A DNA stretch of 57,854 nucleotides, filler included, from Malacoraja senta (Eukaryota), in assembly GCA_038087875.1 (NCBI GenBank). It is 3 parts of 3 records of this genome, joined end to end, with 100 filler letters (N's around TTAATTAATTAA, not from the genome) between each part and the next. Parts side by side here need not be neighbours in the genome. Positions count along the whole stretch, not along the records: positions 1 to 20,834 come from JAXLNO010005225.1; 2 more parts are not named here. One strand, given 5' to 3'. Below are positions 1-20,834 of the stretch, one piece after another. The position numbers and the translations under genes are program-made. Each line of letters starts with the position of its first letter. The stretch's first letter is position 1. Under the pieces are notes generated by a model. That model was not told where the DNA came from. It searched no databases and saw only the letters and a program-made list of their open reading frames with translations.

Positions 1-236
1 TTACGCAGAGAGTGGTGAATCTCTGGAATTCTCTGCCACAGAAGGTAGTTGAGGCCAGTTCATTGGCTATATTTAAGAGGGAGTTAGATGTGGCCCTTGT
101 TGCTAAAGGGATCAGGGGGTATGGAGAGAAAGCAGGTACAGGATACTGAGTTGGATGAACAGCCATGATCATATTGAATGGTGGTGCAGGCTCGAAGGGC
201 CGAATGGCCTACTCCTGCACCTATTTTCTATGTTTT
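1..236 (+). mobile_element. CR1-type LINE 3' end
   Basis: Same 3' sequence (gagagtggtgaatctctgg...gggccgaatggcctactcctgcacc + ctatgttt-type tail) recurs at 12479-12730 (minus) and 39620-40425, where it follows a CR1 RT C-terminus ([10 protein letters not shown]). Confidence 0.8.
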
Positions 237-424
237 CTCCAGCACTTTTGTCTACCTTTGATTTTCCAGCATCTGCAGTTCCTTCTTAAACACTCAGTTT
301 AGTCAGTTCATTTTATTGTCACGTGTACCGAGGTACAATGAAAAGCTTTTGTTGCGTGCTAACCATCTGCACTTCAGTGGACTGAACCTGGAAGCTTCCT
401 TGATTTTCGTTTTTCAGCTTCTTC

Positions 425-730
425 TTCTGTCGTATGTCTTTTAGACCTGCAGCTCCGTTGAGGCGAGCCAGGCCAACGTGTCATCGTCCAGGTCAATCAG
501 ACCTCGTTCACCATTCGGTGGCCGGTGTTTGGGGCAACTGGTGACTATGTGTTCCACTGTCTGTGTTGGGTCCCCACACTCGCACGAGGCGCTGTCCATG
601 AGGCCCCACAGCTTCATCGCTACTCCATAGTTTCCGATGCCTGTCCTCAAGCGGTTGAGGGTTGTCCACTGCTTTCGGGGCTGGCCCTGGCCAGGGACGT
701 TTTACTGCAGTTGAATGATAATCAGTGCTA
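425..730 (-). mobile_element. Vingi/Ingi-like LINE 3' fragment
   Basis: ORF 441-650 reads (LN)RMRTGIG..WG...CECGDPTQTVEHIVTSCP, the C-terminal zinc-knuckle region typical of Ingi/Vingi-type LINEs; gaagaag tail; second copy at 39788-40120. Confidence 0.65.
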
Positions 731-907
731 TTGACCGGGAATAGGTGCAGAAGAGATTCACCAGGATGTTACCTGGGTTTGGGGACTTGAGTTACAGGGA
801 GAGGTTGGATAGGCTTGGCACTTTTTTATTTGAAGCGGAGGAGGCTGAGGGGTGACCTTATTGTACATGATCATGAGGGGCATGGATAAAGTGAACGCAC
901 AGTCTTT

Positions 908-1489
908 AGGCTCTGTCTTACGTGTTTGCGGTCATCGGCGGTGAAGCGCGGCTTCGCCTGTAGAGTGGACCGCACGGCAACGGTGAGAGCGCCGAGCCTA
1001 TCCACGGGAGCGCCGCACGGAAGCTGCGCGGGGGCCGAGTTATTCAAATACGGCTGGTCCCACGTGCATGCGGTAAGTAAAAAAAAGGGCGGGCCGACAG
1101 CGATGACGTCGGCCCGCCGCACGTGACTCACTAGCGGCAGCTGTGGCGGCGGCCGTCCTGATTGCGGCGCTGTAGCCGTGGCTGTGCCTGCGGCCGTGCC
1201 GCACACGTGCCTCACTGGCGGAGGCTGTGGCAGTGCAAGTTTGACGCACGGCGCTCGAGCCACACTGGCGGCGGCCCGTGCGGGCGGCCATGCCGCACTC
1301 GTGCATCACTGGTGGAGGTTGTGCGGTAGGAAAATATTTTTCAACAGTGTAGGTTTTAATTTAGCACCGTGCGGTGTTGGGAACACCGCCGCACGGCCCC
1401 GGAATTGTACGTTCTCATGAGTGCGCGGTCTATGGCGGCAGATTCTTCCCGTTTCGCCGCCAATGACCGCAGACTCGTGAGACAGGCCT
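908..1489. mobile_element. GC-rich non-autonomous TIR element (PIF/Harbinger-like MITE) inserted in a CR1 fragment
   Basis: About 35-bp imperfect TIRs (aggctctgtcttacgtgtttgcggtcatcggcgg / revcomp aggcctgtctcacgagtctgcggtcattggcgg); ttt on both sides; CR1 sequence continues across it; about 4 internal gcac(a)cgtgnntcactggcgg motifs. Confidence 0.6.
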
Positions 1490-1531
1490 TTTTTTCTTAA
1501 GGTAGAGGATTCTAGAGATTTTCCAGTGAGT

Positions 1532-1830
1532 GGCACGGTGGTGCAGCGGTAGAGTTGCCGCCTCACAGCGCCAGTGACCCAGGTTCAATCCTGAGCGCAG
1601 GTGCTGCTTGTATGGGGTTTATACATCCTCCCCGTGACCGCGTGGGTTTTTTACGGGATCTTCAATTTTCTCCCACACCCAAAGATGTACAGGTTTGTAG
1701 GTTAATTGGCTTGGTATAAATGTAAATTGTCCCTAGTGTGTGTAGGATAGTGTTACTGTGCAGGAATCGCTGGTCGTCGCGGACTCTGCGGGCCGAAGGG
1801 CCTGTATCTCTAAAACTAAAAAACTAAAAC
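1532..1830 (+). mobile_element. tRNA-derived V-SINE (HE1-like); representative of many copies
   Basis: A box (tggtgcagcgg), B box (ggttcaatcc) and V-SINE-type core (gtgggtttt...ttttctcccacacccaaag). Other copies near 2857-3030, 5990-6260, 10231-10505, 20190-20390, 21780-22070, 23800-24075, 28630-28950, 29030-29310, 30212-30500. Confidence 0.75.
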
Positions 1831-1884
1831 GAAATAGTTTTAAAAAGGAATCAAAGGTCATTCCTAGGTCAAAGGAATCAAAGG

Positions 1885-2715
1885 TCATGCGCCGTCCTGT
1901 GTGGTATGGCTGCCCAGCCTGCAGCTGTCCGTTTTCATCTTTAAAAAAAAAATTTAGTTAGTTAGTTGTTTTGGTTTTAGGAGTTCTATTCTTTTTTATG
2001 TGGGGGGTGGGGGGAACTACTTTCTAGGGTCCATACCTGGTCGGAGAGGCAGCTTTTCTCCGGGCTGCACTTTCGACCTGTCCTCGCGGCCTACCAGCAG
2101 GCCTGGAGCAGCGTTTCCTGAGGGGACCGCTCAGGACCTCGGCTTCGGCAGCGGCACAGCGCTGGAGCGCTATCGCGGAGCGGGCGATGCCTTGCCCGGG
2201 TCGCCGCGCTGGAACTCCGGTGAGCTGGGACCGCCGGTGAACATAGCGGAGCTGCAGGTCTGTGGAGCAGTCAGCTGCGGGCGGCGGCTGAACTTTACAT
2301 CGGGAGCCTGGGATCTCGCGACGAGATCGCCAGTGGTGGAGCTCCATCGAGCGTGGCCTGTCGGCTTCGGAAGCAGCGGACTCCGGTAGGGAGACGGCCG
2401 TTCCAGGTGTCCCAAGCTGCTGAGAGGGTTCTCCCGATGCCGGAGCACCATCAGCCGGCGAAGAAGGGCCTGTAACATCGGCCCCCGTAGCGGTGACTGT
2501 GGAGGCCTATATAGGCCAGACTATGGGTGGACAAGGGGATTATGGGCTGGACTTTGTGCCTTCCCCCACAGTGGGATCCATTGTGGGGGGATGTTTTTAT
2601 GTTTTATGTTAAATTTCTTTAATATTTGGTCTATTTGTGCTGCATGGCAAGAACAAATTTCACTACACCATTTGGTGTATGTGACAATAAATGTCCTTTG
2701 TCCTTTGTCCTTGTC
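1885..2715 (+). repeat. GC-rich interspersed repeat family with LINE-like 3' tail (copy 1 of 4)
   Basis: Shares the motif gtgccttccnncacagtg, a TG-rich segment and a gtgacaataaa-type end plus short tandem tail ((tgtcctt)n here) with 15260-15960, 18360-18740 and 37740-38600. Confidence 0.55.
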
Positions 2716-3030
2716 CTAATCACATTTTCCTGTACAACAAATGTGAAACCTATTCATTTATTAATTTAGTCAAATTCAATTAGAAATATAAAATTATGAG
2801 AAGCATTGCAGGCTACACAGTCAGAAACTTTTTCCCAGGGTGGAAATGGCAAGCCACACAATGACAAAGCGGTAGAGTTGTTACTGCCTCACAGCGCCAG
2901 AGATCCGGGTTCAATCCTGACTGCGGGTGCTGTCTGTACAGAGTTTTTATGTTCTCCCTGTGACTACATGGGTTTTCTCCGGGTGCTCCGGTTTCCTCCC
3001 ACACTCCAAAGGCGTGCACGTTTGTAGATT

Positions 3031-3178
3031 AAGCGTAGCTAATGTAACCCCCCTTTTTAAGCGTAGCTAATGTAACCCCCCTTTTCAAAGGGTAGCTAAT
3101 GTAACCGCCCTTTTTAAAGGGTAGCTAATGTAACCGCCCTTTTTAAAGGGTAGCTAATGTAACCGCCCTTTTTAAAAA
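3031..3178 (+). repeat. 5 x ~29-bp tandem repeat derived from CR1 coding sequence (RVANVTPLFK)
   Basis: aag(c/g)gtagctaatgtaacc(c/g)cccttttt repeated 5 times; the last unit runs directly into CR1 RT ([14 protein letters not shown]). Confidence 0.85.
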
Positions 3179-3671
3179 GGGAGTGAGAGAGAAAACGGGG
3201 AATTACAGACCAGTTAGTCTAACATCAGTAGTGGGGAAACTGCTGGAGTCAGTTATTAAAGATGGGATAGCAGCACATTTGGAAAGTGGTGAAATCATTG
3301 GACAAAGTCAGCATGGATTTACGAAAGGTAAATCATTTCTGCCGAATCTTATAGAATTTTTCGAGGATGTAACTAGTAGAGTGGATAGGGGAGAACCAGT
3401 GGATGTGTTATATCTGGACTTTCAGAAGGCTTTCGACAAGGTCCCACATAAGAGATTAGGATACAAACTTAAAGCACACGGTATTGGGGGTTCAGTATTG
3501 ATGTTGGTAAAGAACTGGCTGACAAACAGGAAGCAAAGAGTAGGAGTAAACGGGTCCTTTTCAGAATGGCAGGCAGTGACTAGTGGGGTACCGCAAGGCT
3601 CAGTGCTGGGACCCCAGCTATTTACAATTTATATTAATGAGCTGGATGAGGGAATTGAAGGCAACATGTCC
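3031..3671 (+). mobile_element. CR1 LINE reverse-transcriptase fragment, inverted relative to the adjacent 5' part
   Basis: ORF 3183-3758: [16 protein letters not shown]...QHGF...[13 protein letters not shown]...[18 protein letters not shown]. Confidence 0.9.
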
Positions 3672-5964
3672 TTGTTCCCCATGATCAATTCACCTGTTTC
3701 TGACTGCAAGGGACCTGCATTTGTTTTAACTAATCTTTTTCTTTTCACATATCTATAAAAGCTTTTGCAGTCAGTTTTTATGTTCCCTGCCAGTTTTCTT
3801 TCATAATCTATTTTCCCTTTCCTAATTAAGCTCTTTGTCCTCCTCTGCTGGACTCTGAATTTCTCCCAGTCCTCTGGTAGGTTGCTTTTTCTGGCTAATT
3901 TGTACGCTTCATCTTTTGTTTTGATACTACCCCTGATTTCCCTTGTTATCCATGGATGCACTACCTTCCCTGATTTATTTGTTTGCCAAACTGGGATGAA
4001 CAATTGTTGTAGTTCATCCATGCAGTCTTTAAATGCCTTCCATTGCATATCTACCGTCAACCCATTAAGAATCTGCCAGTCTATCTTGGCCAATTCACTT
4101 CTCATACCCTCAAAGTTACCTTTCTTTAAGTTCAGGACCCTTGTTTCTGAATTAACAATGTCACTCTCCATCCTAATGAAGAACTCAACCATATTATGGT
4201 CACTCTTGCCCAAGGGGCCACGCACAACAAGACTGCTAACTAACCCTTCCTCATTACTCAATACCCAATCTAGAATAGCCTGCTGTCTCATTGGTTCCTC
4301 TACATGTTGGTTTAGAAAACTATCCCGCATACATTCCAAGAAATCCTCAGCACCCTTGCCAATTTGATTCACCCAATCTATATGTAGATTGAAGTCACCC
4401 ATTATAACTGTTTTACCTTTGTTGCACGCATTTCTAATTTCCTGTTTGATGCCATCCCCAACTCCACTACTACTGTTAGGTGGCCTGTACACAACTCCCA
4501 CTAGCGTTTTCTGCCCCTTAGTGTTTCGCAGCTCTACCCATATCGATTCCACATCCTCCAAGCTAATGTCCTTCCTTTCTATTGAGTTAATCTGCTCTCT
4601 AACCAGCAACGCTACCCCACCTCCTTTCCCTTTCTGTCTATCCCTCCTGAATATTGAATATCCCTGGATGTTCAGCTCCCAGCCTTGGTTACCCTGGAGC
4701 CATGTCTCCGTGATCCCAATTATATCATAGTCATTAATAGCTATCAGCACATTCAACTCATCCACCTTATTACGAATGCTCCTTGCATTGAGACACAAAG
4801 CCTTCAGGCTTGTTTTTACAACACTCTTACCCCTTATACAATTATGTTGAAAAGTGGCCCTTTTTGATTTGTCTGACTGCCACTTTTACTTTTCACCTTG
4901 CTACCTATTGCTTCTGCCCTCATTTTACACCCCTCTGTCTCTACGCTCACACATTTAAGAAACCCTTTCCCTTTAACTCGATCCTCAACTATCCCATTCG
5001 ACACCCCACCCCCTTATTCAGTTTAAAACCACCCGTGTAGCAGTGGCAAACCTGCTTGCCAGAATGCTGGTCCCCCACCTGTTAAGATGCAATCCGTCCC
5101 TTTTGTACAGTTCCCTTTTACTCCAAAACAGATCCCAGTGATCTAAGAATCTAAATCCCTGCCCCGTGCACCAGTTCCTCAGCCACACATTCAGGTCCCG
5201 TATCTCCCTGTTCCTGCTCTCGCCAGCACGAGGAACTGGAAGCAAACCGGAGATAACAACCCTGGAGGTCCTGCTTTTCAGCATTTTTCCGAGCTCTCTA
5301 AAGTCACGCTGCAGAATATTCATCCCCTTCTTTCCGACATCGTTTGTGCCGACATGCACTACCACTTCCGGCTGTTCACCTTCGCCCTTGAGGATTTTCT
5401 GCACTCTGTCGGTGACATCCTGGATCCTGGCACCAGGAAGGCAGCACTCCATCCTTGAATCCTGTCTGTTGCCGCAGAAACCCCTGTCCGTACCTCTCAC
5501 AATGGAGTCTCTCACTACAATGGCGTTGCCTGACTTTGGCCTTTTTGGTTTTGGCTCAACAGCCCCATTCGCATCGCAAGCCAGTCTGCCGCTCAGTGTT
5601 AAAACGTCTTCTGTCCCGACAGCTTCTAAGTGGGTGAACCTGTTCACAAGAGGTACAACACCCAGGGACGTTTGCATTCCATGCTTCCCTCCCTTTCTCA
5701 CTGTCTCCCACCTTCTCTCTTCCAGTACCTTAAGTGTAACAATCTTACTGTAGGACTTGTAGAGGAACGACTCCGTTTCTCGGACAGACCTGAGGTCATC
5801 CACTTGCTTCTCCAGTTCCCCAACACGGTCCTTCAGGAGCTGTACCTGGATGCACTTGTCACATTTGTAGCAGCCAGAGGCACCAGCAGTGTCCTTGACC
5901 TCCCACATACTGCAAGCATCACACTGAATCAGCTTGCCTGACATCTCCTTCTTTCGTCTCTCCC
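3665..5964 (-). mobile_element. CR1 LINE 5' part: ORF1 with SGNH/GDSL-type esterase and ORF2 APE endonuclease
   Basis: ORF 5018-5944 has an N-terminal CxxC..CxxC, VVRDSIVR, HVGTND and DGLHLN motifs; ORF 3629-4798 has CLNARS, GITETWL, YRPPNS, GDFN and SDHN endonuclease motifs. Confidence 0.9.
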
Positions 5965-6298
5965 TTGGATAGCATGGAACTGTACCTGGAAAGTTGCTGC
6001 CTTACAGTACCACAGACCAAAGTTCAATCCTGACAATGGGTGCTGTCTATATAGAGTTCATATATTCTCTCTGTGACCATGTGAGTTATCTCCGGGTGCT
6101 ACAGTTCCGTCACATTCAAAGAAGTGCAGGTTTGTAAGTTTTTTGGCTTCTGTAAATTGTCCCTAGTGTGTAGGGTAGAACTAATGTTTGGGTGGTCGTT
6201 AGTCAGCACGGGTTCAGTGGGCCAAAAGGCCTCTTTCCATGCTGTACCTCGAAACTAAACGTGACAATAATAATCCGAAACTTATCCCTGTGCCTATC

Positions 6299-6463
6299 TG
6301 TAGATTAGTGTCACTCATACTGTGGCTCCGCCCACAGGCTTATTAGACAGCTCTCTCTCTCTCTGGTAGACTGGTAGTAAGCATGCGTGTTTCCTCTGCA
6401 GAGTTACTAATAAAAGACTATGGATTCTAACCACTATGTGTGAGTTTGATCATTCTTCCAACA
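6299..6463 (+). mobile_element. Solo LTR related to the Gypsy LTR at 54615-54796
   Basis: tgtagattag...ccaaca (TG..CA); shared block catactgtggctccgcccacagg; 5-bp TSD ctatc (6294-6298 and 8718-8722, after the inserted hAT). Confidence 0.85.
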
Positions 6464-8712
6464 GGGCTCGAAATTAGCAGTTGCCCGGTGCCAATGGCAA
6501 CCTAAAAGCCATGCCATTTTGCCCGGCTTGGCAAGCAACCGGGACACCTGCCCGCCCGCCATCCGTGTCTGGGTCTCGGGTTCCGCTCAGCAAGGCCGGC
6601 CGCCGAGCCCTGCACATGCGCACTGCCACAGCAACTGGTCGGCGTCGGCCACTTTCTCCCTCCCTTTGCATTGTGGGAGTTCTGGCCGCCATTGCTGTCC
6701 GGTCGCTGCCTCAGCTGGAGTAACTCTTGCTTCTTGGTTTCCAGGTCCTCCAAAAATATTCGAAATGGAATTTAAACTGGTGGAACCACCACCACCAAAC
6801 TCCAAACTGAAAAATAACAGCCTATTGCATTTTATCCGTTTATTTATTGTGTATATATATGGTCTATAGTATAGAGACACACTGAACTTTTATCTCCTGT
6901 TCTGTATTATGTTTACATATTCTGTTGTGCTGCAGCAAGCAAGAATTTCATTGCCCTATCTGGGACACACAACAATAAAACTCTCTTGACTCTTGACTTG
7001 GACTTAAGCAAAAAAGGGTTCTTGGGGGAAAAAAAACTACCTTAAATTTAGTTGCATCTGGTTGGGTACCTATAGTAGGGTGACAACTATTCCATGCTTT
7101 AATTGTGCGGGGGAACTCCATGGAGCAGCCAGCATCTCTGGATAGAAAAAATTGGGTGACATTTCTGGTAGAAACCCTTCTTTACATTTCCTCTGGTTTT
7201 AGTGTTTTTAGTTTAATTTAAAGATACAGTGTGGAAGCAGGCCCTTCGGCCCACTGAGTCCACGCCGACCACCGATCACCCGTACTCTAGTTCTATCCCA
7301 CACATCAGCAACGTAAGTCAAGATTGTTTTATTCTCTCACGTCCCAGTTAGAACAATGAAATCCTTACTTGCAGCAGCACAACAGAATATGTAAACATAG
7401 TACTCTGTAAACAATGTTATAAACGAGAAAACAAAACTCCACACAGACAGCACCCATATTCAGGATCAATTCTGGGTCTCTGGCAATATTAGGCAGCCAA
7501 TTTATGGGCAATGTACTGCCCCAATAGCCTTGAAGTGAATTAAAGCATACAGTAGCTGTAAAGGGGGACATAGCGTCACTTAGAGATTTAAGACTGAAAA
7601 TGGATAGTTTCTTTTTTTTAGTAACCAAAGTTATCAACGTATAATTTTTTGTGTGTTGGAAAATAAAATATAATGGCACAGCTGGTAGACTTGCTGCCTC
7701 ACATGCCAGAGACCTGTGTTCAATCCTGTTCTCGGGCACTGTCTGTGTTGAATTTGCACATTCTCCCTGCAATCATGTGGGTTCCCTCCCACATCCCAAA
7801 GACGCATTGGCTTTGTAGGTTAACTTTTCTCTGTAAAATTGCCCCTAATGTGCAGGAGTGGGTGAGGAAAGTGGGATAACAGAACTTGTGTGAATGGGTA
7901 GACACAAATGCTGGAGAAACTCAGCAGGTGAGGCAGCATCTATGGAGCAAAGGAAAAAGGCGACGTTTCGGGTTGAGACCCTTCTTCAGACTGATGTCGG
8001 GAGGAGTGGGGGGCGAAAAAGAAAGGAAGAGGCGGAGACAGTAGGCTGTGGGAGAGCTGAGAATGGGAGGTGGGGGGAGGGAGAAAGCAAGGACTATCTG
8101 AAATTGGAGAAGCCAATGTTCATACCGCTGGGGTATAAACTACCCAAGCAAAATATGAGGTGCTGTTCCTCCAATTTGCGGTGGGCCTCACTCTGGCCAT
8201 GGAGGAGGCACAGGACAGAAAGGTCGGATTCGGAATGGGAGGGGGAGTTGAAGTGCTGAGCCACCAGGAGATCAAGTTGGTTATTGCGAACTGAGTGGAG
8301 GTGTTGTGCGAAGCGATCGCCATGCCTGCGCTTGGTCTCACCGAGGTTGATCATACGCTGAATAACCATATTTTTGTTTGGAAGTGGAAAGAGATAATAT
8401 AAATTGCATTCATTGCAACGTGTAAACAGAGATGAGATACTGTATTGTAATTTTGATGCATGTCATTGTGGTATATATCATGTCTTCATTGGTGAATATG
8501 TTTAGTTTGTGACTTTATTTGAAGCAGAAATAATATGTGAATGTTTCATTGACCATAATTCTGACTGGTAACTACGCACTTCATCCGAGCACATTATCGC
8601 ACGCGTCATGCAAGCCATCTTAAATGACCACCTAAACTGTCATTTGGCAACCTAAAAAGCTGCCGAGGTTGCCCGGCTGGCAACAGGGAAAAAAAGTTAA
8701 GCGAGAGCCCTG
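6462..8712. mobile_element. Composite non-autonomous TIR element, copy 1
   Basis: Termini cagggctc...gagccctg; absent from the duplicate segment (empty site around 23550-23565); internal SINE, Rex tail and Penelope pieces. Confidence 0.85.
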
Positions 8713-11066
8713 CAACACTATCTCTTGTGTTGTTCCGTCTCTGGAACTAAGTGGTAGCTGCGCTTAACTGTTGTAGCATAACTGTTTATGCTGAACAATT
8801 CATGAAAAAAGTCTAAAAAGGATTAAAAAACAAGTGATTCCAGCATGTTGAAAGATAATTGGGACTGATACGTAATCGGTGGCACTGCGACACAATTCCA
8901 GTGACGAGGGTTCGATCACATCTTGAAACAGAAAATCTTAAACTGAGGCAGGCGCCTCTACTTCATTAATCCAGTGCTGTTATGACACTGGGCCTTAACA
9001 TGAGAATATGAGAAATTGGGTATTTCCTTGGGGCAAAATCAGACTTTTCAGAGACTTGGAAGCTGCAAGATAGTCCTGAAATGTGGTGGATCTCTGCGTG
9101 CTTTTCCAGAAGAGGACGAATTGTACTTATGTACAGTATGACTTGACTGGAGAGAATGCAGAACAACCATTTCACTGCAGATAGACACAAAAAGCTGGAG
9201 TAACTCAGCGGGACAGGCAGCATCTCTGGAGAGAAGGGACGGGGTGTCCAGCATCTGCTGTTCCATCCGAACCATTTCACTGCATCTCTGCATGCATGAA
9301 ATTAAACAGAGTTATATAAAATGCAGACATACTGCAGTACTCAAGTAGGTCAGGCTGTCCTCATTTGGCAGGTGGATAACTTAACTGTAATTAAAAAAAA
9401 CACAAAAACGTGCAGGTGTAACTCAGTGGTTCAGGCAGCATCTGGAAGACATGGTTACGTAATGTTTCAGCTTGGGATCCTGCTTCATACTTCTTGCATC
9501 TTGTCTTTCTGTCTTCAACTTAACAGTTGAAATGACCAGTTCTTTTATCGACAGGGAATGCAACTCGTTGAATGTGGAATTGAGTTTGAAAGGCTGCAAC
9601 ATGTCCAGACAGAAGCTGAGTTGTTGGTCCTCAAGGATACTTTCACCCTTGTTATCCTAGTGTAAGAGGTACAGATGGATGGATCATGGTGGGTGTTGAA
9701 TGGAGAATTAGAGTGGCAGGAATTAGGAATCTTAGAAAGTCCCATGGATTGAATGCGGGTTCTCCAGAAAGCAGCCATTCTATTTGTTTCATTGATGCAA
9801 TGTGGAAGATTACGTCATGAAAACCAAATGCAGTAGATTTGACTGGAAGTGCTTGTGTTTCACGCTGTTTCACTTTGAAGAACTGCCTGGGTCTATGGAA
9901 AGTGGTAAATGGATGGATGTTGCTTGCACCAAGACAGGAAAGTAGAGGAAAGTTGTGGGGATAGTAGACAGACCAGGGAGCGAAAAAGGGAATGACTACT
10001 TCAAAATATAGAATGGGGATCAGGGCAGGAGGGGAGGGAGAAATGGATTGACTAATTGAATCAGATTTAAACTGGGAGGAAGTATTCAACATGGAGGCTG
10101 GAGGAGTGGAAAACATATCCCTGCCCTGTCCAATGAGAATATATAGAACATAGAACAGTACAAGAACAGGACTTTCAGCCTGCAATGTCCATGTGGAACA
10201 GGATACCAAGTTAAACTAAGGCAACACAGAGGCACAGTGATAGAGTGGCTGTCTTACAGCATTAGAGACCCGGGTTTGATCCTGACTAGAGTGCTGTCTG
10301 GACGGAGTTTGTACGTTCTCTCTGTCACCCTGTGGGTTTTCTCTGGGGGCTCCGGTTTCCTCCCAAATACAAAAGACATGCAGGTTAATTGGCTTCTGTA
10401 AATTGTCCCTAGCGTGTAGGACAGAAATAGTGAATGGGCAATTGCTGGTCAGTGTGGACTCAGTGGCCCAAGGTTCCTGTTTCTCTAAACTAAACCAAAA
10501 CTAATCTCCACTGCCTGCATGTGATCCATATTCTTGTATTCCCTGCATACCCACAAGCCTGTCCAAAACCTTCTTAAGCACCATTATCATGTCTTCCTCT
10601 ACCACCACTCCTGGTAGCGCATTCTAGGTATCAAGCTCTCTCTGTGCAAAAAAACACTTGACCTGCACATCTCGTGTAAATTTTGCCCTTCGAAGCTTAA
10701 CGCTGTGCTCTTTTGAGATGTGTGATAGACATGCAATCCCATTAGGGGCTGTCAACTGTGGTCAAGAAAATCCATGGTTAACTAATATGAAAGACATCAA
10801 TTGCATTTTCTCCCTGTCAAACAGGGATGTAATGCTGAGGTTCTATAAGGCACCAGTCAAGCCACATTTGGAGCATTGTGAGCAATTTTCGGCACCATAT
10901 CTGAGGAAGGATGTGCTGGCTCTGGAGAGGGTCCAGAGGAGTACAAGAATGATCCCAGGAATGAATGGGTTAACATATGATGACCATTTGATGTCAGTGG
11001 GCCTGTACTTGCTGGAGTTTAGAAGCATAAGGGGGGACCTCATTGAATCATACAAAATAGTGAAAG

Positions 11067-12433
11067 ACTGTTTGCTTTTGAAATTGGTTCGATTATGTTT
11101 GCTCCCACAAAATTGCATTAAAAAACCTATAGTGAAAATCATATAATATATAGTGGTATACGAATTTGGAAACAATTAAAAAAGACTTTAAAATTGGATA
11201 ATTTATCACTCTGTCTCCCCATTATAAACAACCCTTTATTCAAACCTTCCATGTTGGATAAAGGCTTTACACAATGGAAAAATTATGGAATTAAAAAGAT
11301 GGGTCATCTTTATAGGAAAGGCACTTTTCTTTCATTTCAGGAGTTACAACAGATTTACGGACTACACTCAAATAACTTTTTCAGATATTTACAACTTAGA
11401 GATTACATTAAATCAAATACACAAGATTACAGAACTAGGGAACCAGAAATCCTTGATGAATGTTTGAATAAACATCCTAATACAGAAAAATTAATATCTC
11501 ATATTTATAATACCCTCTTAGATAGTGAGGTCCTGCCAACGGATTTATATAGACACACATGGGAAAATGAATTAGGCCAACCCATAACGAAAGATATTTG
11601 GGACGAAAGTCTACAATATATACATCAATGCTCGTTAAATGCCAGACATGCCTTAATACAATTTAAAGTATTACATAGATTACATTATTCTTAAACAAAA
11701 TTAAATAGAATCTTCCCACATATCTCTCCTATTTGTGATAAATGCCAGCATTTAGAGGCTAACCTTTGTAAATTGTATAAAAATCAAAAATTTCTGGAAG
11801 GACATTTTCAGAATAATTTCTGAAGTAGTCAATACCCAATTGGATCCCGACTCAAAACTAATAATATTAGGAATATCAGAACAAAGCCTAAGACTTACAA
11901 TAAACCAAAGAAGCTTTCTTGATTATAGTATAATAATTGGGAAAAAATTAATATTAAAATTTTGGAAAGGTCCTATAAACCCCACAATTAAAATGTGGAT
12001 TATGGAAATGTCAGAGACCTTACATTTGGAAAGAACTAGACTTGTCTTAATTGACAAACATGAATTATTTAATGGAATATGGTCTCCATGTATTGATTTT
12101 TTGAAAGGGTAAATTGGTTCAGCATGGGAATCTGACTGAAATCCAAGCTCAGGATTAGATGAATAGTTATGCTTTATAACTTACGGACCTATCTCCAAAG
12201 TTGTATTATTGGTAAATTATTCCATTCTTCTTTATCATGCTTTTAAATTTCTCACTTTCTATCTATAAAACAAAACTAAATAGAAGCAGATTTAATATAC
12301 AATTGATAAAGGAGGACCACTATTATTTTGATAGCTGGACTCCCACCTATTAGCAAAGTAGGATTGACATATAAGAAATGTTTGTATTATGATATGCACA
12401 TGCTTCTAATAAAAATATTTAAAATAAATTTAA
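11067..12433 (+). mobile_element. 5'-truncated L1-clade LINE (ORF2 C-terminus, 3' UTR, A-rich tail)
   Basis: ORF 11194-11694 (IINNPLF..W...GI...NFFRYLQLR...QFKVLHRLHY) and downstream frames; 13-bp TSD aaaatagtgaaag at 11054-11066 and 12434-12446; empty site in the duplicate around 21225. Confidence 0.85.
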
Positions 12434-12478
12434 AAAATAGTGAAAGGCTCGGATAGATGTGGATGTGGAGAGGATACA

Positions 12479-12730
12479 TAGATACATAGAAATTAGGTGC
12501 AGGAGTAGGCCATTCGGCCCTTCGAGCCTGCACCGCCATTCAATACGATCATGGCTGATCATCCAACTCAGTATCCCGTACCTGCCTTCTCTCCATACCC
12601 CCTGATCCCTTTAGCCACAAGGGCCACATCTAATTCCCTCTTAAATATAGCCAATGAACTGGCCTCAACTACCCTCTGTGGCAGAGAGTTCCAGAGATTC
12701 ACCACTCTCTGTGTGAAAAAGTTTTTCCTC
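12479..12730 (-). mobile_element. CR1 3'-end fragment inserted antisense into an older CR1
   Basis: Reverse complement of the CR1 3' end with (ctatgtat)n tail; host CR1 resumes at about 12731 (ggatgtctccaatggtgggagagtc). Confidence 0.75.
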
Positions 12731-13322
12731 TGGATGTCTCCAATGGTGGGAGAGTCTACGACGAGAGGTCATAGTCTCAATATTAAAGGACATTCCTTTA
12801 GGAAAGAGATGAGGATGAATTTATTTTGTCAGAGGGTGGTGATTCAATGGATATTTTTAATTCTTGATTAGTATGCACGTCAGGGGTTATGGGGAGAAGG
12901 CAGGAGAATGGGGTTAGGAGGGAGAGATAGATCAGCCATGATTGACTGGCGAAGTCGACTTGATGGGCCGAATGTTCTAATGCTGCAGCCATCACTTATG
13001 ACCTTATGACTCAGTTGGCTTCCTCCATGTGCTCCAGTTTTGTCCCATATACCAAAGACGTGCCAGTGAGTTAGTTGGACATTGCAAATTATCCGTCGTG
13101 GAGCTGAATGTAAGGAGAATCCGAGGGAGCTGAGTGCAAGTTGTGAGAGAGAGCAGTGGAACGGTTTGTCGACATTGCATAGAAAACTAGCATAGAATCA
13201 ATGGGCCGAATGACCTTTCCCTCTGTCATGATTGGGTCAGAGATAATATGACTCATTGCCTCAGAGTGAAATATTACTCATTGCCTACCATCACAAAACA
13301 ACATCCTTTGTTCTGAACTCAC

Positions 13323-13598
13323 CTTTTCTGGTCAGGTATGTCTTTCCAATTGCATAGTATGTAAGCCATAGATCCACACAGTCATGTTCTAACAAGCTCT
13401 TGAAATAACGGTTCATTTTTTCATTCTTGTCCCATTTCTCTTTGAAGGTCTCAGCTATTGGATCATGCACCGTCCACTTTAGTTTGTCCTTATCAAAACT
13501 AAATGCATATCTTCCATCAAAAGCCAACTTCAATATCCCTACAGTGGGACTGTGATCGTCCACCTCACAACCAAACTGTCCTTGAACGTAGTGATAAT
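13323..13598 (-). CDS. MHC class I-like alpha-2 domain exon (non-classical)
   Basis: 276-bp phase 1-1 exon, acceptor atttttatttcag, donor G|gtgagt; no stops. DYHYVQGQFGCEVDDHSPTVGILKLAFDGRYAFSFDKDKLKWTVHDPIAETFKEKWDKNEKMNRYFKSLLEHDCVDLWLTYYAIGKTYLTRK has the class I alpha-2 pattern H..Q...GC, A.DG, W, KW, LE..C, Y...GK. Confidence 0.93.
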
Positions 13599-13759
13599 CT
13601 GAAATAAAAATAAAAATCATTATTTGATTAATTGTTATGACTGGGTAATTTCTGAACACCAGGGTACAAGTTATTTATATATGTCACAAGTAGCAAGGGT
13701 CACAGCATAGATCCCTGTGACAACTCTACTTGTCACTGAACTACAGCCTGAATATTTGG

Positions 13760-14215
13760 CCTTCCGTACAACTGTAGAGACCATATTATTGTATGGGTGT
13801 GATGCATGGACTCTCACTCCAGCACTGTCCTAGTCTCTTGATGGTACCTACACCCGAATGCTCGGAAAAGTTTAAAATGTCAGATGGAGGGACCACATCA
13901 CCAACGCCCAGCTCTATGGGGAGAATCCACCTCTGACCGAGAAGATCACGTTGAGAAGGATGAGGCTCGCAGGTCACTGGCTCCATTACCCAGAAATGCC
14001 AGCGAACAAGGTTGTGCTGTGGGAACCCACCCATGGAAGACTTGACCCACGACGGCCAATCAAGATGATGGTGAAGACGTTGATGGAAGACGCATGTGTA
14101 GAGATAAAAAAGGCGCTTGCCAGTTGCATGAAGGAGAGATGTGTGGTGCATCCGTCACCGTGCCCGTCGGAAACCAGCACGGCACTAATGTTTTCAATGA
14201 TTATTATTATCATCC
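13760..14215 (+). mobile_element. Decayed RTE-type LINE 3' fragment
   Basis: VETILLYGCDAWTL...TRML...RRMRLAGHW...KVVLWEPTHG pattern across frames. Confidence 0.6.
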
Positions 14216-14335
14216 ACTACACCCCTCTGTCCTGAGGATTTATCCACATTTCTCTTCAAGTGATCCAACATCTTCTTCTTGCTTAACTTCAAAGTGTCCC
14301 TGCATGTTAGCATTCTCCACATTGATTCTCCATGT

Positions 14336-15162
14336 GTAAGAAAGAACTGCAGATGCTGCAGATGTTAAAATCGAAGAGAGACACAAAATGCTGGCGTAAC
14401 TCAGCGGGTCAGGCAGCTTCCCTGGAGAGATGGAATGGGCATCGTTTTGGGTCGAGACCCTTCTTCATACTGATGTCAGGGGAGGGACAAAGATAGAATG
14501 TCGGCGGAGACAGTAAGACTGGTGGGAGAATTGGGAAGGGGGAGGGGATGGAGAGAGAAATCAAGGGCTATCGAAAGTTATAGAAGTCAATGTTCATACC
14601 GCTGGAGTATAGACTACCAAAGCGAAATATGAGGTGCTGTTCCTCCAATTTGTGCTGGGCCACACTCTGACAATGGAGGAGGCCCAGAACAGAAAGGTCA
14701 GATTGGGAATGGGAGGGGGAGTTGAAGTGCTGAGCCACCGGGAGATCGGGTAGGGTAGGACGGACTGAGGGGAAGTGTTCAGCAAAACGATCGCCGAGCC
14801 TGCGCTTGGTCTCACTGATGTAGAGAAGTTGACAACTGAAACAGTGGATACAGTAGATGAGGTTGGAAGAGGTGCAAGTGAACTTCTGCCTCACCTGGAA
14901 AGACTTTTGGTCCTTGGACGGAGTCGAGGGGGGACGTAAAGGGACAGGTGTTGCATCTCCGGCGGTTGCAGGGGAAAGTAGCCGGGGAGCGGGTGGTTTG
15001 GGTGTGAAGGGACAAGTTGACCAGGGAGTTTCGGAGGGAACGGTCTCTGCGGAAAGCAGAAAGGGGTGGAGATGGGAAGATGTGATCAGTAGTGGGATCC
15101 CGTTGGAGGTGGCAAAAATGATGGAGGATTTTATGATGTACGTACTATTAATAGTCCTTACT
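14336..15162 (-). mobile_element. Penelope-like element fragment with GIY-YIG endonuclease
   Basis: ORF 14568-15221: FTCTSSNLIYCIHC..C.LLYISETKRRLGDRFAEH...AQHFNSPSH; putative 11-bp TSD attctccatgt (14325-14335, 15163-15173). Confidence 0.75.
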
Positions 15163-15259
15163 ATTCTCCATGTCTTCCTTGGTGAAACCAAACCTCGCCT
15201 ATATCCACAAACTCCAAGCACATATTCCCTTCTATATCCTTAAGCAATCCACCTTTTGC

Positions 15260-15960
15260 TGCAATGGTTGCCTCGCCAACAGTATGTCTGTCCCTTCCTT
15301 CTTTGTGTCCATTTTGTATGTGTTAAATGTATATTCTTTCGTGTTCTTTTGCTTGTTTTGGGGGGGGGGGGGGTTGGGGGAGTTGTGGGAAACTTTTCCT
15401 AATCTCTTACCTCGACGTTGATGCGATATTTTCTGTATCGTATCTCCGTCCACAATGCGGCCTAACATTGAGGAATGGCGGCCTTTGCTAGAGATCGACC
15501 GGGCGATCCATCGCAGGAGCCTGTGGACTTACCATCATGGAGCTCGCGATCCCTGTCGGGGATCGACTTTAGGGCTCCAACTGTGAGAGCCTGCAAGACT
15601 TTAACATCGCGGAGCCCGCGGTCCCAGGTCGAGACCGACATCCGGGACCTCCAAGCCGCAGGAGTTTCGACCGCTCCGACCGCTCCGATGTGGGAGTTTT
15701 GATTCCCCAACGGGGGTTTCGACCACCGACTGCAGATTGTTTGACTGCCCCGACCGCGGGAGATAAAGAGGAAGGAGATTAGACTTTATTGCCTTCTATC
15801 ACAGTGAGGAACGTGCGGGCTCCTCTGTTGTGGATGTTTATGTTAACTTTTACGTTATTGTGTGTCTTGTTGCTTTCTTTTTGTATGGTGTATGGTAGTC
15901 TGCATTTCAATGTACCTTAATTGGTATATGTGACAATAAACTAACCATGAAACCTTGAAA
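15260..15960 (+). repeat. GC-rich interspersed repeat family (copy 2)
   Basis: ttgccttctatcacagtg motif and gtgacaataaa end, as in 1885-2715. Confidence 0.5.
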
Positions 15961-16165
15961 AAGATGTGGGATTTTCTGTAATCCGACTCACTAAAGCCAC
16001 TTTGTGGCCTTTATTAGCCCCTTTGGTTTTAAGCTTTAGAGCAGTGGTTCTTAATCTTTTTGGCCCCACGACCCCATCAGGCATTCTTGATCAGTACCGT
16101 GACCTCTAAAACAAAATTTGAAAAAAAACAGCCTGATTTATTAAAACATGTCTGCCAATGCTCAG

Positions 16166-17918
<1,753 letters not shown>

Positions 17919-19385
17919 GGTTCACAACACACACTGTTTGTGCGTGTATACGCAGGGCCTCACAGGAATTTTATCAGTGGGTACAAAGTTTCTTTTGGCC
18001 CCCCTTCCCTTCTCCATTAGTCATCCTGTTTTTATCCACTATGCTACAGTTTTATGCCATGAGCTGTAGCCTGCACGGCAAAAAGGGGTATGGAAGATGA
18101 GAGAGGGGTGGATGGGGCGCTCTGTTGATTTTCTGCATTTGAGGCCTTATGTCCCTATACACCCTCCATGATAAATATAAATACATATAAATAACATAAA
18201 AGGATCAGCAAGCACATTTGTTTTCCTTCACTCTATAGGATGCTGCCTCACCCATTGAGTTTCTCCAGCATTTTATCTACCTTTGTTTTGAACATCTTTG
18301 TTTATGCTACAATACAGATAAGGAGAAAGAATTCACATTGAAACATCCTTTTATATTTAACCGCAAAACCGCTGGCCTGTGGCCTATAACATCCTGAAGC
18401 TGCGGTCTCCAGTAGGAAAGTGCCGAGTCGGGACCTCCAAGCCGCAGAGTGTGTTTGTCCGTCCCAACATCGGAGTTTGGATCATCCTGACGAGAGGGCC
18501 TTGTACATTGGTCCGTCCCTAGATGCGACTACGGAGGGGTTATGGCCCCGAACACAGGTGAACAAAGGAGGAGGACTGGCTGAAACTTGTTGCCTTCCAC
18601 CACAGTGAAGAATGCTGTAGTGGATGTTTGTGTTCAATTTTATTGTGTATTGTGTGTTCTTTTTACGTGTATCACTGCTGGCAAATTCACTTCACTGCAC
18701 CTTCGGGTGTATGTGATGAATAAAACTGACTTTAACTTTGAATACTTAGCCTGGCCAAATCCACAAGACGTTCATGAGACATTGTCGACCTTAAATAATT
18801 CTTAATCAGCTTGAGTTTGCTAAATGACCTCTGCAGAAGCTACTGTTTGCTGGAATTGTTAAATAGTATTCTGAAGCTAACACAAACATTTGGAAACAGG
18901 TTACCAAGTCAATAGTCTGTTAACAAGTTCAACAGATCTAATGGTTTTAACTTCATTTATAAAATTCACCCTCCCACTAACACACATACACTCAGACACA
19001 CACTCACTCACCTACTCACATACACCCACACACATCCACACACACACACACACACCCTCACCCACTCACTCACACCCACCCATCCACACACTGACCCAAA
19101 CCCAGGCCCGGACCACTGAAACAGCCGCGGCTCCTGACTCTCACCACCTCCCCGGGCGAGGCCACCGCAGCCACTGTCGCCAACCTTCACCGTCTTCAGA
19201 AAGCCAATGATGCTGCTGCCTATATCTCTACTCCAGCTCCCCACGGGCCTCCACCAGCGACTCTGCCGACCCTCGCCTCTCCACCTGCCACCAGCGGGCC
19301 AGAGCCGTCACCTCACCAGAGTTCCCAGCATAGCACCAGGCCCACAACCTAAACCATGCAGACAGCACATGGTCCGATTGCTGGC

Positions 19386-19743
19386 TCCTAGTGCTCTCCC
19401 CTCCTTCTCCTACAGGGAAGATCCATCAGTATTGATGACTCTGTTGGGTCCTAGTGCTCCCCCCCCTCCCTCCTACAGGGAAGACCCATCAATAGTGATG
19501 ACTCTGCTGGGTCCTAGTGCTCTCCCCCCTCCTACAGGGAAGATCCATCAGTAGTGATGACTCTGTTGGGTCCTAGTGCTCCCCCTCCCTCCTACAGGGA
19601 AGACCCATCAGTAGTGATGACTCTGCTGGCTCCTAGTGCTCTCCCCCCTCCTACAAAGAAGATCCATCAGTAGTGATGACTCTGCTGGGTCCTAGTGCTC
19701 CACCCCCGCGCCCTCCTACAGGGAAGATCCATCAGTAGTGATG
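19386..19743. repeat. Minisatellite, 6 x ~59-63 bp
   Basis: tcctagtgct-(C-rich)-ctcctacagggaaga(t/c)ccatcagtagtgatgactctg(t/c)tgg repeated six times. Confidence 0.9.
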
Positions 19744-20834
19744 GGTCTTCCCCTTCCCCCTCTTTTAATCAGGTTACCCCGACCACACACCCGCCAGTTA
19801 AAATTCCCTGCTTTATTACGGATCACAATTTCTACGAATTACGATATATAAAACTCTGAAGGCACAAAATGTGAATGCTAGTCTTCACAAAATATATGTA
19901 AACATTTTCTGAGATTTCACGAAATTCCCACCCCCCCTCCTTCAGCTCCAGGGCTCCTATTGGACTCTGGGCCCGGGTACGATGTACCCCCTGCACCCCC
20001 CCTCTCATAGGCCCTATGTATATGTAAGCGCATACGTGAACAAAATACTGTGTGTGGTATGTACCTTTGTTAGGTTCCTAAAAATAGGCTCAACAAATTG
20101 ATGTTCTTTACAACCCCTTCATGACCCCCGGAAAAACCCCAAACGGCCCCCATGGGGGTCATGACCCCCAGGTTAAGAACCACTGCTTTGGAGATACAGT
20201 GCTGAAACAGGCCCTTCAGCTCACACTAGGGACAATTTACAATTATACCAAGCCAATTTACCTACATCTCAGAGAAAAGCCACACAGGTTACGGGGAGAA
20301 CATGCAAACTCCGTACAGTCACCACTCGTAGTCGGGTTCAAACCCGGGTCTCTGGTGCTGCAAGGCAGCAACTCGTGTAAGGCCACGATCTCTTGGCTTT
20401 GCTTATAGTTATTATCATGTTTTATCTTCTATTGTGTTCTTTTTGCTTATTGCATATAAACAAATGTAAAGCTGCACATAAGGTTGGATCTTTTCGAGGC
20501 CCGAGCTGACCCATCTTTTACCACAAATATCTATATTTAGAGAAACATAGATATAATAAGGCTCACCCCTCATGGGCATTGAAGGCTCCATATTTCTATA
20601 AAATATGGAGACCATTAAGCTGTTCACTGCCAAGTTTATTTTTCACTATTGGCCATGATCCCTAGTGTACTCGGCGGTGGCATTGAACAGGTTAAGGATA
20701 TCCAGTGATGTGTAGCTGCGCTACCCTTCCTTGGTATTTTTAAGGGCCTGTCCCACTTACGTGTCCTTGGCACACAAATTATGCGACCTCGTGGTGGCGT
20801 TGAGGCTCACGGGCATCGTATGGCCGCGCGGGAC

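What the first reader, a model, noticed from the sequence alone, without database searches (positions are those of the whole stretch)
13323..13598. Intact but strongly non-classical MHC class I alpha-2 exon with a hydrophobic groove signature
Seen: open 276-bp exon with canonical splice sites. Established: classical class I alpha-2 keeps T143, K146, W147, Y159 and Y171 as peptide anchors (HLA-A2 numbering). By manual alignment, K146, W147 and Y171 are kept but T143->F, Y159->L, W167->L and Y123->A; floor positions 99/114/116 are F/L/L; the beta2m-contact D122 is Y. Inference: not a conventional peptide presenter, possibly a lipid or other hydrophobic-ligand binder (CD1/EPCR-like logic) and possibly an unassigned chondrichthyan class I lineage.
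Basis: partly seen in the sequence, partly recalled or inferred. Interest (0 to 1): 0.72.

Follow-up and report, generated by a model that had tools for sequence, protein, structure and literature searches.

The report
Skate UGA class I alpha-2 exon

Summary
The exon is real. It lies on the minus strand at 13598..13323: 276 bp, open in one frame, phase-1 start, with a polypyrimidine-AG acceptor and a GTGAGT donor.

It is not an unassigned lineage. Its best solved match is PDB 9CH4, titled "shark nonclassical MHC class I, UGA" (E 8e-35). It is 95% identical to an Amblyraja radiata RefSeq protein and 92% to a Leucoraja erinacea one. In a tree it sits inside a strongly supported elasmobranch-wide clade, among the skates.

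Only alpha-2 is in the piece. That is expected, because the Amblyraja gene spans 78 kb and the window is collinear with its introns 2 and 3.

- **Selection:** alpha-2 dN/dS is 0.15-0.44.
- **Splicing:** the splice sites are conserved in four batoids, and a Logan cDNA contig stops matching the window exactly at the donor end and within 2 nt of the acceptor end.
- **Groove:** seventeen alpha-2 groove positions are nearly invariant across the lineage and much more hydrophobic than in other class I sequences.
- **Tail:** orthologues carry a YxxI/V cytoplasmic tail motif.

A 2025 review reports, as a personal communication, that UGA and UFA bind CD1d-type lipids. Verdict: ordinary member of a recently named lineage, functional inference supported, lineage novelty refuted.

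The parts
13323..13598 (-). Alpha-2 domain exon (276 bp, phase-1 start and end, 91 full codons) of a UGA-lineage nonclassical MHC class I gene
   Evidence: Open frame. Pfam MHC_I 2.7e-13. 9ch4_A E 7.9e-35. 95% identical to Amblyraja XP_032898133. A cDNA contig matches exon bases 3 to 276, ending exactly at the last exon base.
13599..13618 (-). 3' splice acceptor: polypyrimidine tract plus AG (gatttttatttttatttcag)
   Evidence: Read directly. The same context is found in Amblyraja, Rhinoraja and Pristis orthologues.
13317..13322 (-). 5' splice donor gtgagt
   Evidence: Read directly. It is conserved in three orthologous loci.
13599..20834 (-). Part of intron 2 (between the alpha-1 and alpha-2 exons). 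The alpha-1 exon is not in the piece.
   Evidence: Window 13892-15152 is collinear with Amblyraja L001 53086-51450. tblastn finds no alpha-1 match. Amblyraja intron 2 is 11.3 kb against 7.2 kb available here.
1..13322 (-). Part of intron 3 (between the alpha-2 and alpha-3 exons), interrupted by transposon insertions. The alpha-3 exon is not in the piece.
   Evidence: Collinear blocks are 12732-13244, 9004-11009, 8713-8935 and 5988-6463. They match L001 60315-59755, 66751-64754, 72371-72148 and 72854-72367. Collinearity ends at the LINE at about 3148-6001. Amblyraja intron 3 is 20.4 kb against 13.3 kb available here.

Best explanation
The segment is the alpha-2 exon of a skate gene of the UGA lineage. 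UGA is an MHC-linked, nonclassical class I heavy chain conserved in sharks and rays.

Shown here:
- It is a bona fide spliced-type exon under purifying selection.
- It encodes the second half of the ligand-binding platform: four beta strands of the floor and the alpha-2 helix, with the C101-C164 disulfide.
- Its groove-facing residues are the lineage's near-invariant hydrophobic set: V95, G97, F99, L114, L116, A123, F124, F143, Y155, F156, L159, L160 and L167.

Inferred, from the 9CH4 title and from a review's personal communication:
- The complete protein pairs with beta-2-microglobulin and holds a lipid tail in this hydrophobic groove.
- It is sent through endosomes by a YxxI/V tail motif that I see in the orthologues, and it shows the lipid to T cells.
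- In other words, it works like CD1 without being a CD1 by sequence.

The other exons lie outside this 20.8-kb piece because the gene's introns are 10-20 kb long.
For: - **Exon anatomy:**
- **Family:** Pfam MHC_I scores above threshold.
- **Lineage by sequence:** 9ch4_A is the best solved match at E 7.9e-35, with MR1 next at about 1e-12. Foldseek gives the title of 9CH4 as 'Crystal structure of shark nonclassical MHC CLASS I, UGA'. The Amblyraja orthologue P0154 aligns to 9ch4_A over the whole ectodomain at E 8.6e-118.
- **Lineage by tree:** the UGA clade has 99% SH-aLRT support, batoids 99% and skates 100%, with the window inside the skates.
- **Gene structure:** the Amblyraja gene spans 77.7 kb, and the window is collinear with its introns on both sides of the alpha-2 exon, at 94% identity next to the exon and 80-94% in the blocks further out.
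- **Selection:** dN/dS is 0.15-0.44 among four batoid alpha-2 exons.
- **Expression of the orthologue:** a 3.4-kb Logan contig (SRR11241640) carries the uninterrupted 334-codon CDS. Its match to the window covers exon bases 3 to 276 and ends exactly at the last exon base.
- **Groove:** the 17-position signature is identical to the skate consensus and hydrophobic, 1.50 against 0.21, Mann-Whitney p 4e-12.
- **MHC linkage of the lineage:** the sawfish orthologue lies at 14.02-14.06 Mb on chromosome 34, between brd2 (13.0 Mb) and rxrb (15.5 Mb). That is the class Ib cluster of PMC10751288.
- **Tail:** YxxI/V is present in nearly all orthologues.
- **Literature:** PMC10751288 and PMC12562908.
Against: - Only one exon of the gene is visible, so I cannot show that this particular copy is complete.
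- Skates carry several UGA copies, with four confirmed loci in Rhinoraja. This copy could therefore be a paralogue of unknown status.
- Against Amblyraja there are 6 nonsynonymous and 3 synonymous differences (dN/dS 0.44). That is too few to exclude relaxed constraint on this copy.
- Lipid binding itself rests on a personal communication in a review and on a PDB title. No primary paper is in the searchable library.
- By sequence and predicted fold the protein resembles classical class I and MR1 more than CD1. No CD1 chain appears in the Foldseek top 50.
- The hydropathy test is not phylogenetically independent.
Confidence: 0.85

Rival explanations
1. The exon belongs to a dead or partial UGA copy: a pseudogene, or a solitary duplicated exon on a short scaffold. 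Its intactness would then reflect a recent duplication rather than function.
For: Only alpha-2 is found in 20.8 kb. The lineage is multicopy in skates. The window differs from Amblyraja by 6 nonsynonymous and 3 synonymous changes. Collinearity with the Amblyraja intron is broken by a LINE about 1.3 kb short of where alpha-3 would be.
Against: The frame is open over 91 codons and both splice sites are intact and conserved. All 17 groove positions and both disulfide cysteines match the lineage consensus. The absence of the other exons is fully explained by the 11-kb and 20-kb introns of the orthologue. Intron transposon insertions are common in all the orthologous loci.
Confidence: 0.1
2. The molecule is a nonclassical presenter of peptides or small polar metabolites, in the manner of MR1 or HLA-E, and not a lipid binder.
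For: K146, W147 and Y171 are kept here, and Y7 and Y59 are kept in the orthologues' alpha-1. After 9CH4, the best solved sequence matches are MR1 chains. The Foldseek neighbours are classical class I and MR1, not CD1.
Against: T143, Y159, W167 and Y123 are replaced by F, L, L and A. R97, H114 and Q155 of the classical pattern are replaced by G, L and Y (the HLA-A2 states are from my own knowledge). The position that aligns with the Schiff-base lysine K43 of MR1 is T in the orthologue (alignment). The position equivalent to 84 is not conserved in the lineage (consensus). The review reports lipids by mass spectrometry.
Confidence: 0.05

Closest known systems
Shark UGA (PDB 9CH4, 'shark nonclassical MHC class I, UGA', released 2026-03-18)
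   Same: It is the same lineage. Identity is about 64% in alpha-2 by my count of the printed alignment, and 58% between the Amblyraja model and 9CH4 over the ectodomain (Foldseek). The groove signature is the same: F99, L114, Y122, F143, K146, W147, L159, L167, Y171. The two fall in one clade.
   Different: The window is a skate (batoid) copy, whereas 9CH4 is closest to orectolobiform shark sequences. Differences include L116 against F, A123 against I and W168 against L. Skates have several copies, while the review calls the gene single- or low-copy.
[quoted passage not shown]
   Same: They are orthologues or very close paralogues: 95% and 92% identical in alpha-2, with the same splice sites and collinear introns.
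   Different: There are five amino-acid differences from Amblyraja: E/Q, D/N, T/N, T/P and L/N. One of them falls at the most variable helix position of the skate copies. The RefSeq name is generic and says nothing about lineage.
CD1 (mammalian, avian and reptilian lipid presenters)
   Same: It works alike, by inference. Both have a hydrophobic groove, lack part of the peptide-terminus anchors, and carry a tyrosine-based YxxI/V tail motif in the orthologues. The CD1b, CD1c and CD1d tails are recalled from my own knowledge. Lipid ligands are reported.
   Different: It is not a CD1 by sequence. The CD1-type Pfam model MHC_I_3 scores below threshold (17.8 bits against 35), while MHC_I passes. No CD1 chain appears in the Foldseek top 50. 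It is MHC-linked in elasmobranchs.
MR1
   Same: MR1 is the best non-UGA solved sequence match. It has the same loop lengths in alpha-2, with an ungapped alignment over residues 91-178 apart from one position.
   Different: The lysine that captures MR1 ligands (K43) aligns with T, and W156 aligns with L. MR1 is known only from mammals (PMC12562908, table 2).
Leucoraja XP_055486430 (P0014), the neighbouring class I-like gene
   Same: It is the sister branch of the UGA clade (98% SH-aLRT), with a partly similar groove set, and it lies on the same 127-kb contig as a UGA copy.
   Different: It is only about 39-43% identical, with C99, V114, C124 and W167. It may be UFA, but I have no named reference to test that.

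Membership tests
MHC class I superfamily (alpha-1/alpha-2 platform, Pfam PF00129) | Alpha-2 sequence matches the family profile above the curated threshold | tested here: met
   50.3 bits against a cut-off of 28.3, profile positions 93-178
MHC class I superfamily (alpha-1/alpha-2 platform, Pfam PF00129) | Alpha-2 intradomain disulfide cysteines (C101 and C164) | tested here: met
   Cysteines at exon residues 10 and 73, invariant in 17 relatives
MHC class I superfamily (alpha-1/alpha-2 platform, Pfam PF00129) | One domain per exon, 276-bp phase-1 exon with AG and GT boundaries | tested here: met
   The orthologue's cDNA match covers exon bases 3 to 276 and ends exactly at the last exon base.
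MHC class I superfamily (alpha-1/alpha-2 platform, Pfam PF00129) | Alpha-3 C1-set domain, transmembrane segment and beta-2-microglobulin pairing in the same gene product | not testable with these tools
   The other exons are outside the piece. Orthologues do have a C1-set domain.
UGA lineage (elasmobranch nonclassical class I) | Closest to the named UGA reference and in one clade with its shark orthologues | tested here: met
   9ch4_A at E 7.9e-35, more than 20 orders of magnitude better than the next match. Title. Clade support 99% SH-aLRT.
UGA lineage (elasmobranch nonclassical class I) | Lineage-specific groove residues in alpha-2 | tested here: met
   17 of 17 positions equal the skate consensus, and 12 of the 17 are identical in at least 28 of the 30 lineage rows
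UGA lineage (elasmobranch nonclassical class I) | Location in the MHC class Ib cluster | tested here: inconclusive
   Met for the sawfish orthologue. The window's own chromosomal position is unknown.
UGA lineage (elasmobranch nonclassical class I) | Binds lipid | not testable with these tools
   Rests only on the personal communication in PMC12562908
Classical (class Ia) peptide presenter | Conserved peptide-terminus anchors T143, K146, W147, Y159 and Y171 in alpha-2 | tested here: not met
   F143 and L159 replace two of them, and K146, W147 and Y171 are kept
CD1 | Sequence membership (CD1-type profile PF16497) | tested here: not met
   17.8 bits against a cut-off of 35 for the exon. There is no hit for the full Amblyraja protein, and 29.8 bits for the Stegostoma protein.
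CD1 | Tyrosine-based endosomal sorting motif in the tail | tested here: inconclusive
   YxxI/V is present in most orthologues, but the tail exon of this copy is not in the window
MR1 | Ligand-capturing lysine at position 43 | tested here: not met
   It aligns with T in the Amblyraja orthologue (alignment). Alpha-1 of this copy is not visible.

The most novel reading that the evidence does not exclude
In skates, UGA would not be the single- or low-copy gene the review describes. It would be an expanded, diversifying family of lipid presenters, a CD1a-e-like isoform set that arose independently. The window would then hold a distinct paralogue whose private changes mark a different ligand or receptor specificity, for example L at the most variable alpha-2 helix position.
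Probability: 0.2. Interest if true: 0.5.

Novelty: new member of a known kind. Interest (0 to 1): 0.3.

Why it matters
UGA and UFA push lipid presentation by MHC-like molecules back to the origin of jawed vertebrates. Batoid sequences such as this one show which groove residues have been held fixed since sharks and rays split, and so help define what the lipid-binding groove needs. The exon itself adds a skate copy to a lineage that already has a name and a crystal structure. It does not open a new question. The multicopy state in skates, and the groove-divergent paralogues in sawfish, are the parts a specialist might want to follow.

Tried and rejected
- **Plus-strand reading:** rejected, because stops occur in all three frames.
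- **Other exons in the window:** a motif scan for an alpha-3 Ig domain and tblastn with ten relatives down to E 10 found nothing, and a word-size-7 blastn with the Amblyraja alpha-3 region found only short repeat matches and no match to the exon itself.
- **Primary literature on 9CH4, UFA and UGA:** six searches found only a 2023 remark and a 2025 review.
- **The Almeida 2020 and 2021 lineage papers:** not held in the library. I therefore could not put named UDA or UEA references in the tree.
- **The supplement of PMC10751288:** it carries no protein accessions for these genes. I used coordinates instead.
- **Leucoraja XP_055521885 (P0156):** no gene with exactly this product is on record in the collection, so no genomic locus could be fetched for it.
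- **Predicted structure:** moderate confidence (pLDDT 79.6). I used it only for a fold search. The high TM-score to zinc-alpha-2-glycoprotein (0.81) probably reflects the alpha-3 orientation in a model built without beta-2-microglobulin, so I did not read function into it.
- **Source species:** not identified. The exon and its flanks are closest to Amblyraja (94% over 663 bp), then Leucoraja (88%), then Rhinoraja (86%). That fits either another rajid genus or a paralogue.

Full report
**1. The observation**

The three plus-strand frames are full of stops. On the minus strand, one frame is open for 91 codons over 13596..13323.

With the two leading bases of a split codon, the exon is 13598..13323, or 276 bp. 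It is preceded by a polypyrimidine tract ending in cag and followed by gtgagt.

The peptide matches Pfam MHC_I at 50.3 bits against a cut-off of 28.3, over profile positions 93-178. It also matches a Leucoraja erinacea protein at E 1e-52. This is a real class I alpha-2 exon.

**2.

I anchored the alignment on H93, C101, D119-G120, W133, K146-W147 and C164. This exon has one residue fewer in the 104-108 loop and one more between 147 and 164.

Under that alignment the exon shows F99, L114, L116, Y122, A123, F143, K146, W147, L159, L167 and Y171.

In my set of 38 other class I sequences, the usual states are T143, K146, W147, Y159, W167 and Y171.

**3. What it belongs to**

The best solved match is 9ch4_A at E 7.9e-35. 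MR1 chains come next at about 1e-12. Foldseek gives the title of 9CH4 as "Crystal structure of shark nonclassical MHC CLASS I, UGA", released 2026-03-18.

An exhaustive HMMER search found close relatives:

| Relative | Protein id | Identity to the window's alpha-2 |
|---|---|---|
| Amblyraja radiata XP_032898133 | P0154 | 95% |
| Leucoraja erinacea | P0001 | 92% |
| Rhinoraja longicauda | P0164 | 91% |
| Pristiophorus japonicus (two proteins) | P0002, P0003 | about 71% |

A word-indexed search with the Amblyraja protein found one family across elasmobranchs. It includes skates, sawfish, manta rays and a stingray. Among sharks it includes cow, bullhead, saw, zebra, whale, cat, basking and white sharks and a houndshark.

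A maximum-likelihood tree of 68 ectodomains gives this family 99% SH-aLRT support, the batoids 99% and the skates 100%. The window's alpha-2 sits inside the skates.

The orectolobiform members (Stegostoma, Rhincodon) are the ones most like 9CH4, at about 88% by my hand count of the printed sequences. So the clade is the UGA lineage.

**4. Why only one exon is visible**

The Amblyraja gene spans 77.7 kb for a 341-residue protein. Its alpha-1, alpha-2 and alpha-3 exons lie at 41.9, 53.5 and 74.2 kb of locus L001.

The window aligns collinearly with that locus on both sides of the exon. Identity is 93.7% over the 663 bp that include the exon and 80-94% in the blocks further out, with transposon insertions and deletions in between.

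The piece offers 7.2 kb upstream and 13.3 kb downstream. The orthologue's introns are 11.3 kb and 20.4 kb. No alpha-1 or alpha-3 match exists in the window. Collinearity stops at a LINE insertion at about 3148-6001.

**5. Is it alive?**

- **Splice sites:** the acceptor and donor are conserved in Amblyraja, Rhinoraja and Pristis.
- **Selection:** pairwise dN/dS for alpha-2 among the four batoids is 0.15-0.44.
- **Expression of the orthologue:** a 3.4-kb contig assembled from run SRR11241640 carries the uninterrupted 334-codon coding sequence of the Leucoraja-type protein. It must therefore derive from spliced RNA.
- **Exon boundaries:** when the window exon plus 150 nt of intron on each side is aligned to that contig, the match covers exon bases 3 to 276 and ends exactly at the last exon base.

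All of this supports a functional exon in the lineage. For this particular copy, the evidence is the open frame, the intact splice sites and a perfect lineage signature. The 6 nonsynonymous and 3 synonymous differences from Amblyraja are too few to say more.

**6. How it most likely works**

*Groove.* Seventeen alpha-2 positions that line the groove in classical class I read, in the window: V95, G97, F99, L114, L116, A123, F124, F143, K146, W147, Y155, F156, L159, L160, D163, L167, Y171. The pocket lists are from my own knowledge of the HLA-A2 structure.

The same set, with only conservative swaps, is found in all 30 members of the clade. Mean Kyte-Doolittle hydropathy is 1.50 for the clade and 0.21 for the 38 other sequences. 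That p-value (4e-12) ignores relatedness.

Small residues at 97 and 123, and the loss of the tyrosine hydroxyls at 99, 116 and 159, fit a deeper, greasier cavity.

*Tail.* The orthologues' cytoplasmic tails end in Y-x-x-I/V. Examples are DYQNI in skates and YNVI or YNAV in sharks. This is the kind of tyrosine motif that sends CD1b, CD1c and CD1d through endosomes (my own knowledge).

*Literature.* PMC10751288 mentions a new CD1-like lineage, UFA, in the class Ib cluster. PMC12562908 states, as a personal communication, that UFA and UGA are CD1-like, MHC-linked and single- or low-copy. It adds that crystal structure and mass spectrometry suggest lipids like those of human CD1d.

*MHC linkage.* The sawfish orthologue lies at 14.02-14.06 Mb of chromosome 34, between brd2 at 13.0 Mb and rxrb at 15.5 Mb. 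That is the cluster the paper describes.

I therefore take lipid presentation as the most likely function. The anatomy is shown here. The ligand is inferred from others' unpublished work.

**7. What it is not**

- **Not a CD1 by sequence.** The CD1-type Pfam model stays below threshold. No CD1 chain is among the 50 best Foldseek matches of the predicted Amblyraja ectodomain (pLDDT 79.6).
- **Not MR1-like in chemistry.** The position aligned with the ligand-capturing K43 of MR1 is T.
- **Not a classical presenter.** T143 and Y159 are lost, although K146, W147 and Y171 remain, as do Y7 and Y59 in the orthologues.

**8. Verdict**

This is a genuine exon of a recently named lineage. Interest is modest. 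The more interesting side observations are listed separately. They are the multicopy state in skates, the groove-divergent sawfish paralogues, and a sister gene next door that may be UFA.

Noticed in passing
L003, L006, L007, L008 (Rhinoraja longicauda CM130181.1 at 26.42, 41.36, 34.07 and 31.61 Mb): UGA is multicopy in this skate. Ten gene models fall in one 90%-identity cluster. Four that I looked up lie at separate places spread over 15 Mb of one chromosome. The review calls UGA single- or low-copy.
   Followed up: partly
Pristis pectinata proteins P0165, P0171 and P0174, all on CM019888.1: These are three sawfish paralogues with different groove residues. P0171 has L143, R146, R155 and N163. 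P0174 has A97, V116, S143, Q163 and L171. This looks like isoform divergence of the binding groove.
   Followed up: partly
Leucoraja erinacea contig JAMYXN010000384.1 (L004 covers part of it); protein P0014, XP_055486430: A second class I-like gene lies on the same 127-kb contig as a UGA copy. It is 39-43% identical to UGA and is the sister branch to the UGA clade (98% SH-aLRT). Its best solved match is also 9CH4, at E 3e-60. It may be UFA. No solved structure is closer to it.
   Followed up: partly
Callorhinchus milii proteins P0029, P0035 and P0037: Elephant-shark class I-like proteins, named ZAG-like or F10-like by RefSeq and UniRef, form the next branch out from UGA plus its neighbour (97% SH-aLRT). 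They also have hydrophobic groove positions. They may be a holocephalan counterpart.
   Followed up: no
window 13365-13367 (minus strand; exon residue 78, equivalent to HLA position 169): This is the most variable position among 13 skate UGA sequences, with five states: K, N, H, R and L. The window has L. It sits on the alpha-2 helix next to the conserved L167.
   Followed up: no
Leucoraja erinacea RefSeq models LOC129716032 isoforms X1-X4 (P0152, P0153, P0155, P0169): These gene models of 574-663 residues join UGA exons to a GPR139-like receptor, and Pfam finds 7tm_1 plus MHC_I in one of them. They look like read-through or merged annotations of two neighbouring genes.
   Followed up: no
window 3148-6001: A LINE insertion sits in intron 3. 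On the minus strand there is an endonuclease ORF (3632-4885, Exo_endo_phos) and an ORF with a GDSL-esterase-like domain (5021-6001). A reverse-transcriptase fragment lies on the plus strand (3183-3758), so the element is rearranged or nested. A 94%-identical copy lies elsewhere in the Amblyraja intron.
   Followed up: partly
window 8097-8462 and 14571-15239 (minus strand): These are two related open reading frames sharing a long motif (…ETKRR.GDRFA.H..SVR… NSPSHS… LEEQHLIF.LGSL…). They are copies of one repeated element that is also present many times in the Amblyraja locus. Pfam finds no family.
   Followed up: no
window 16169-17471 (minus strand): Several adjacent ORFs of 110-200 residues have no Pfam match and no counterpart in the Amblyraja locus. 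They are probably a decayed transposase or another insertion private to this copy.
   Followed up: no
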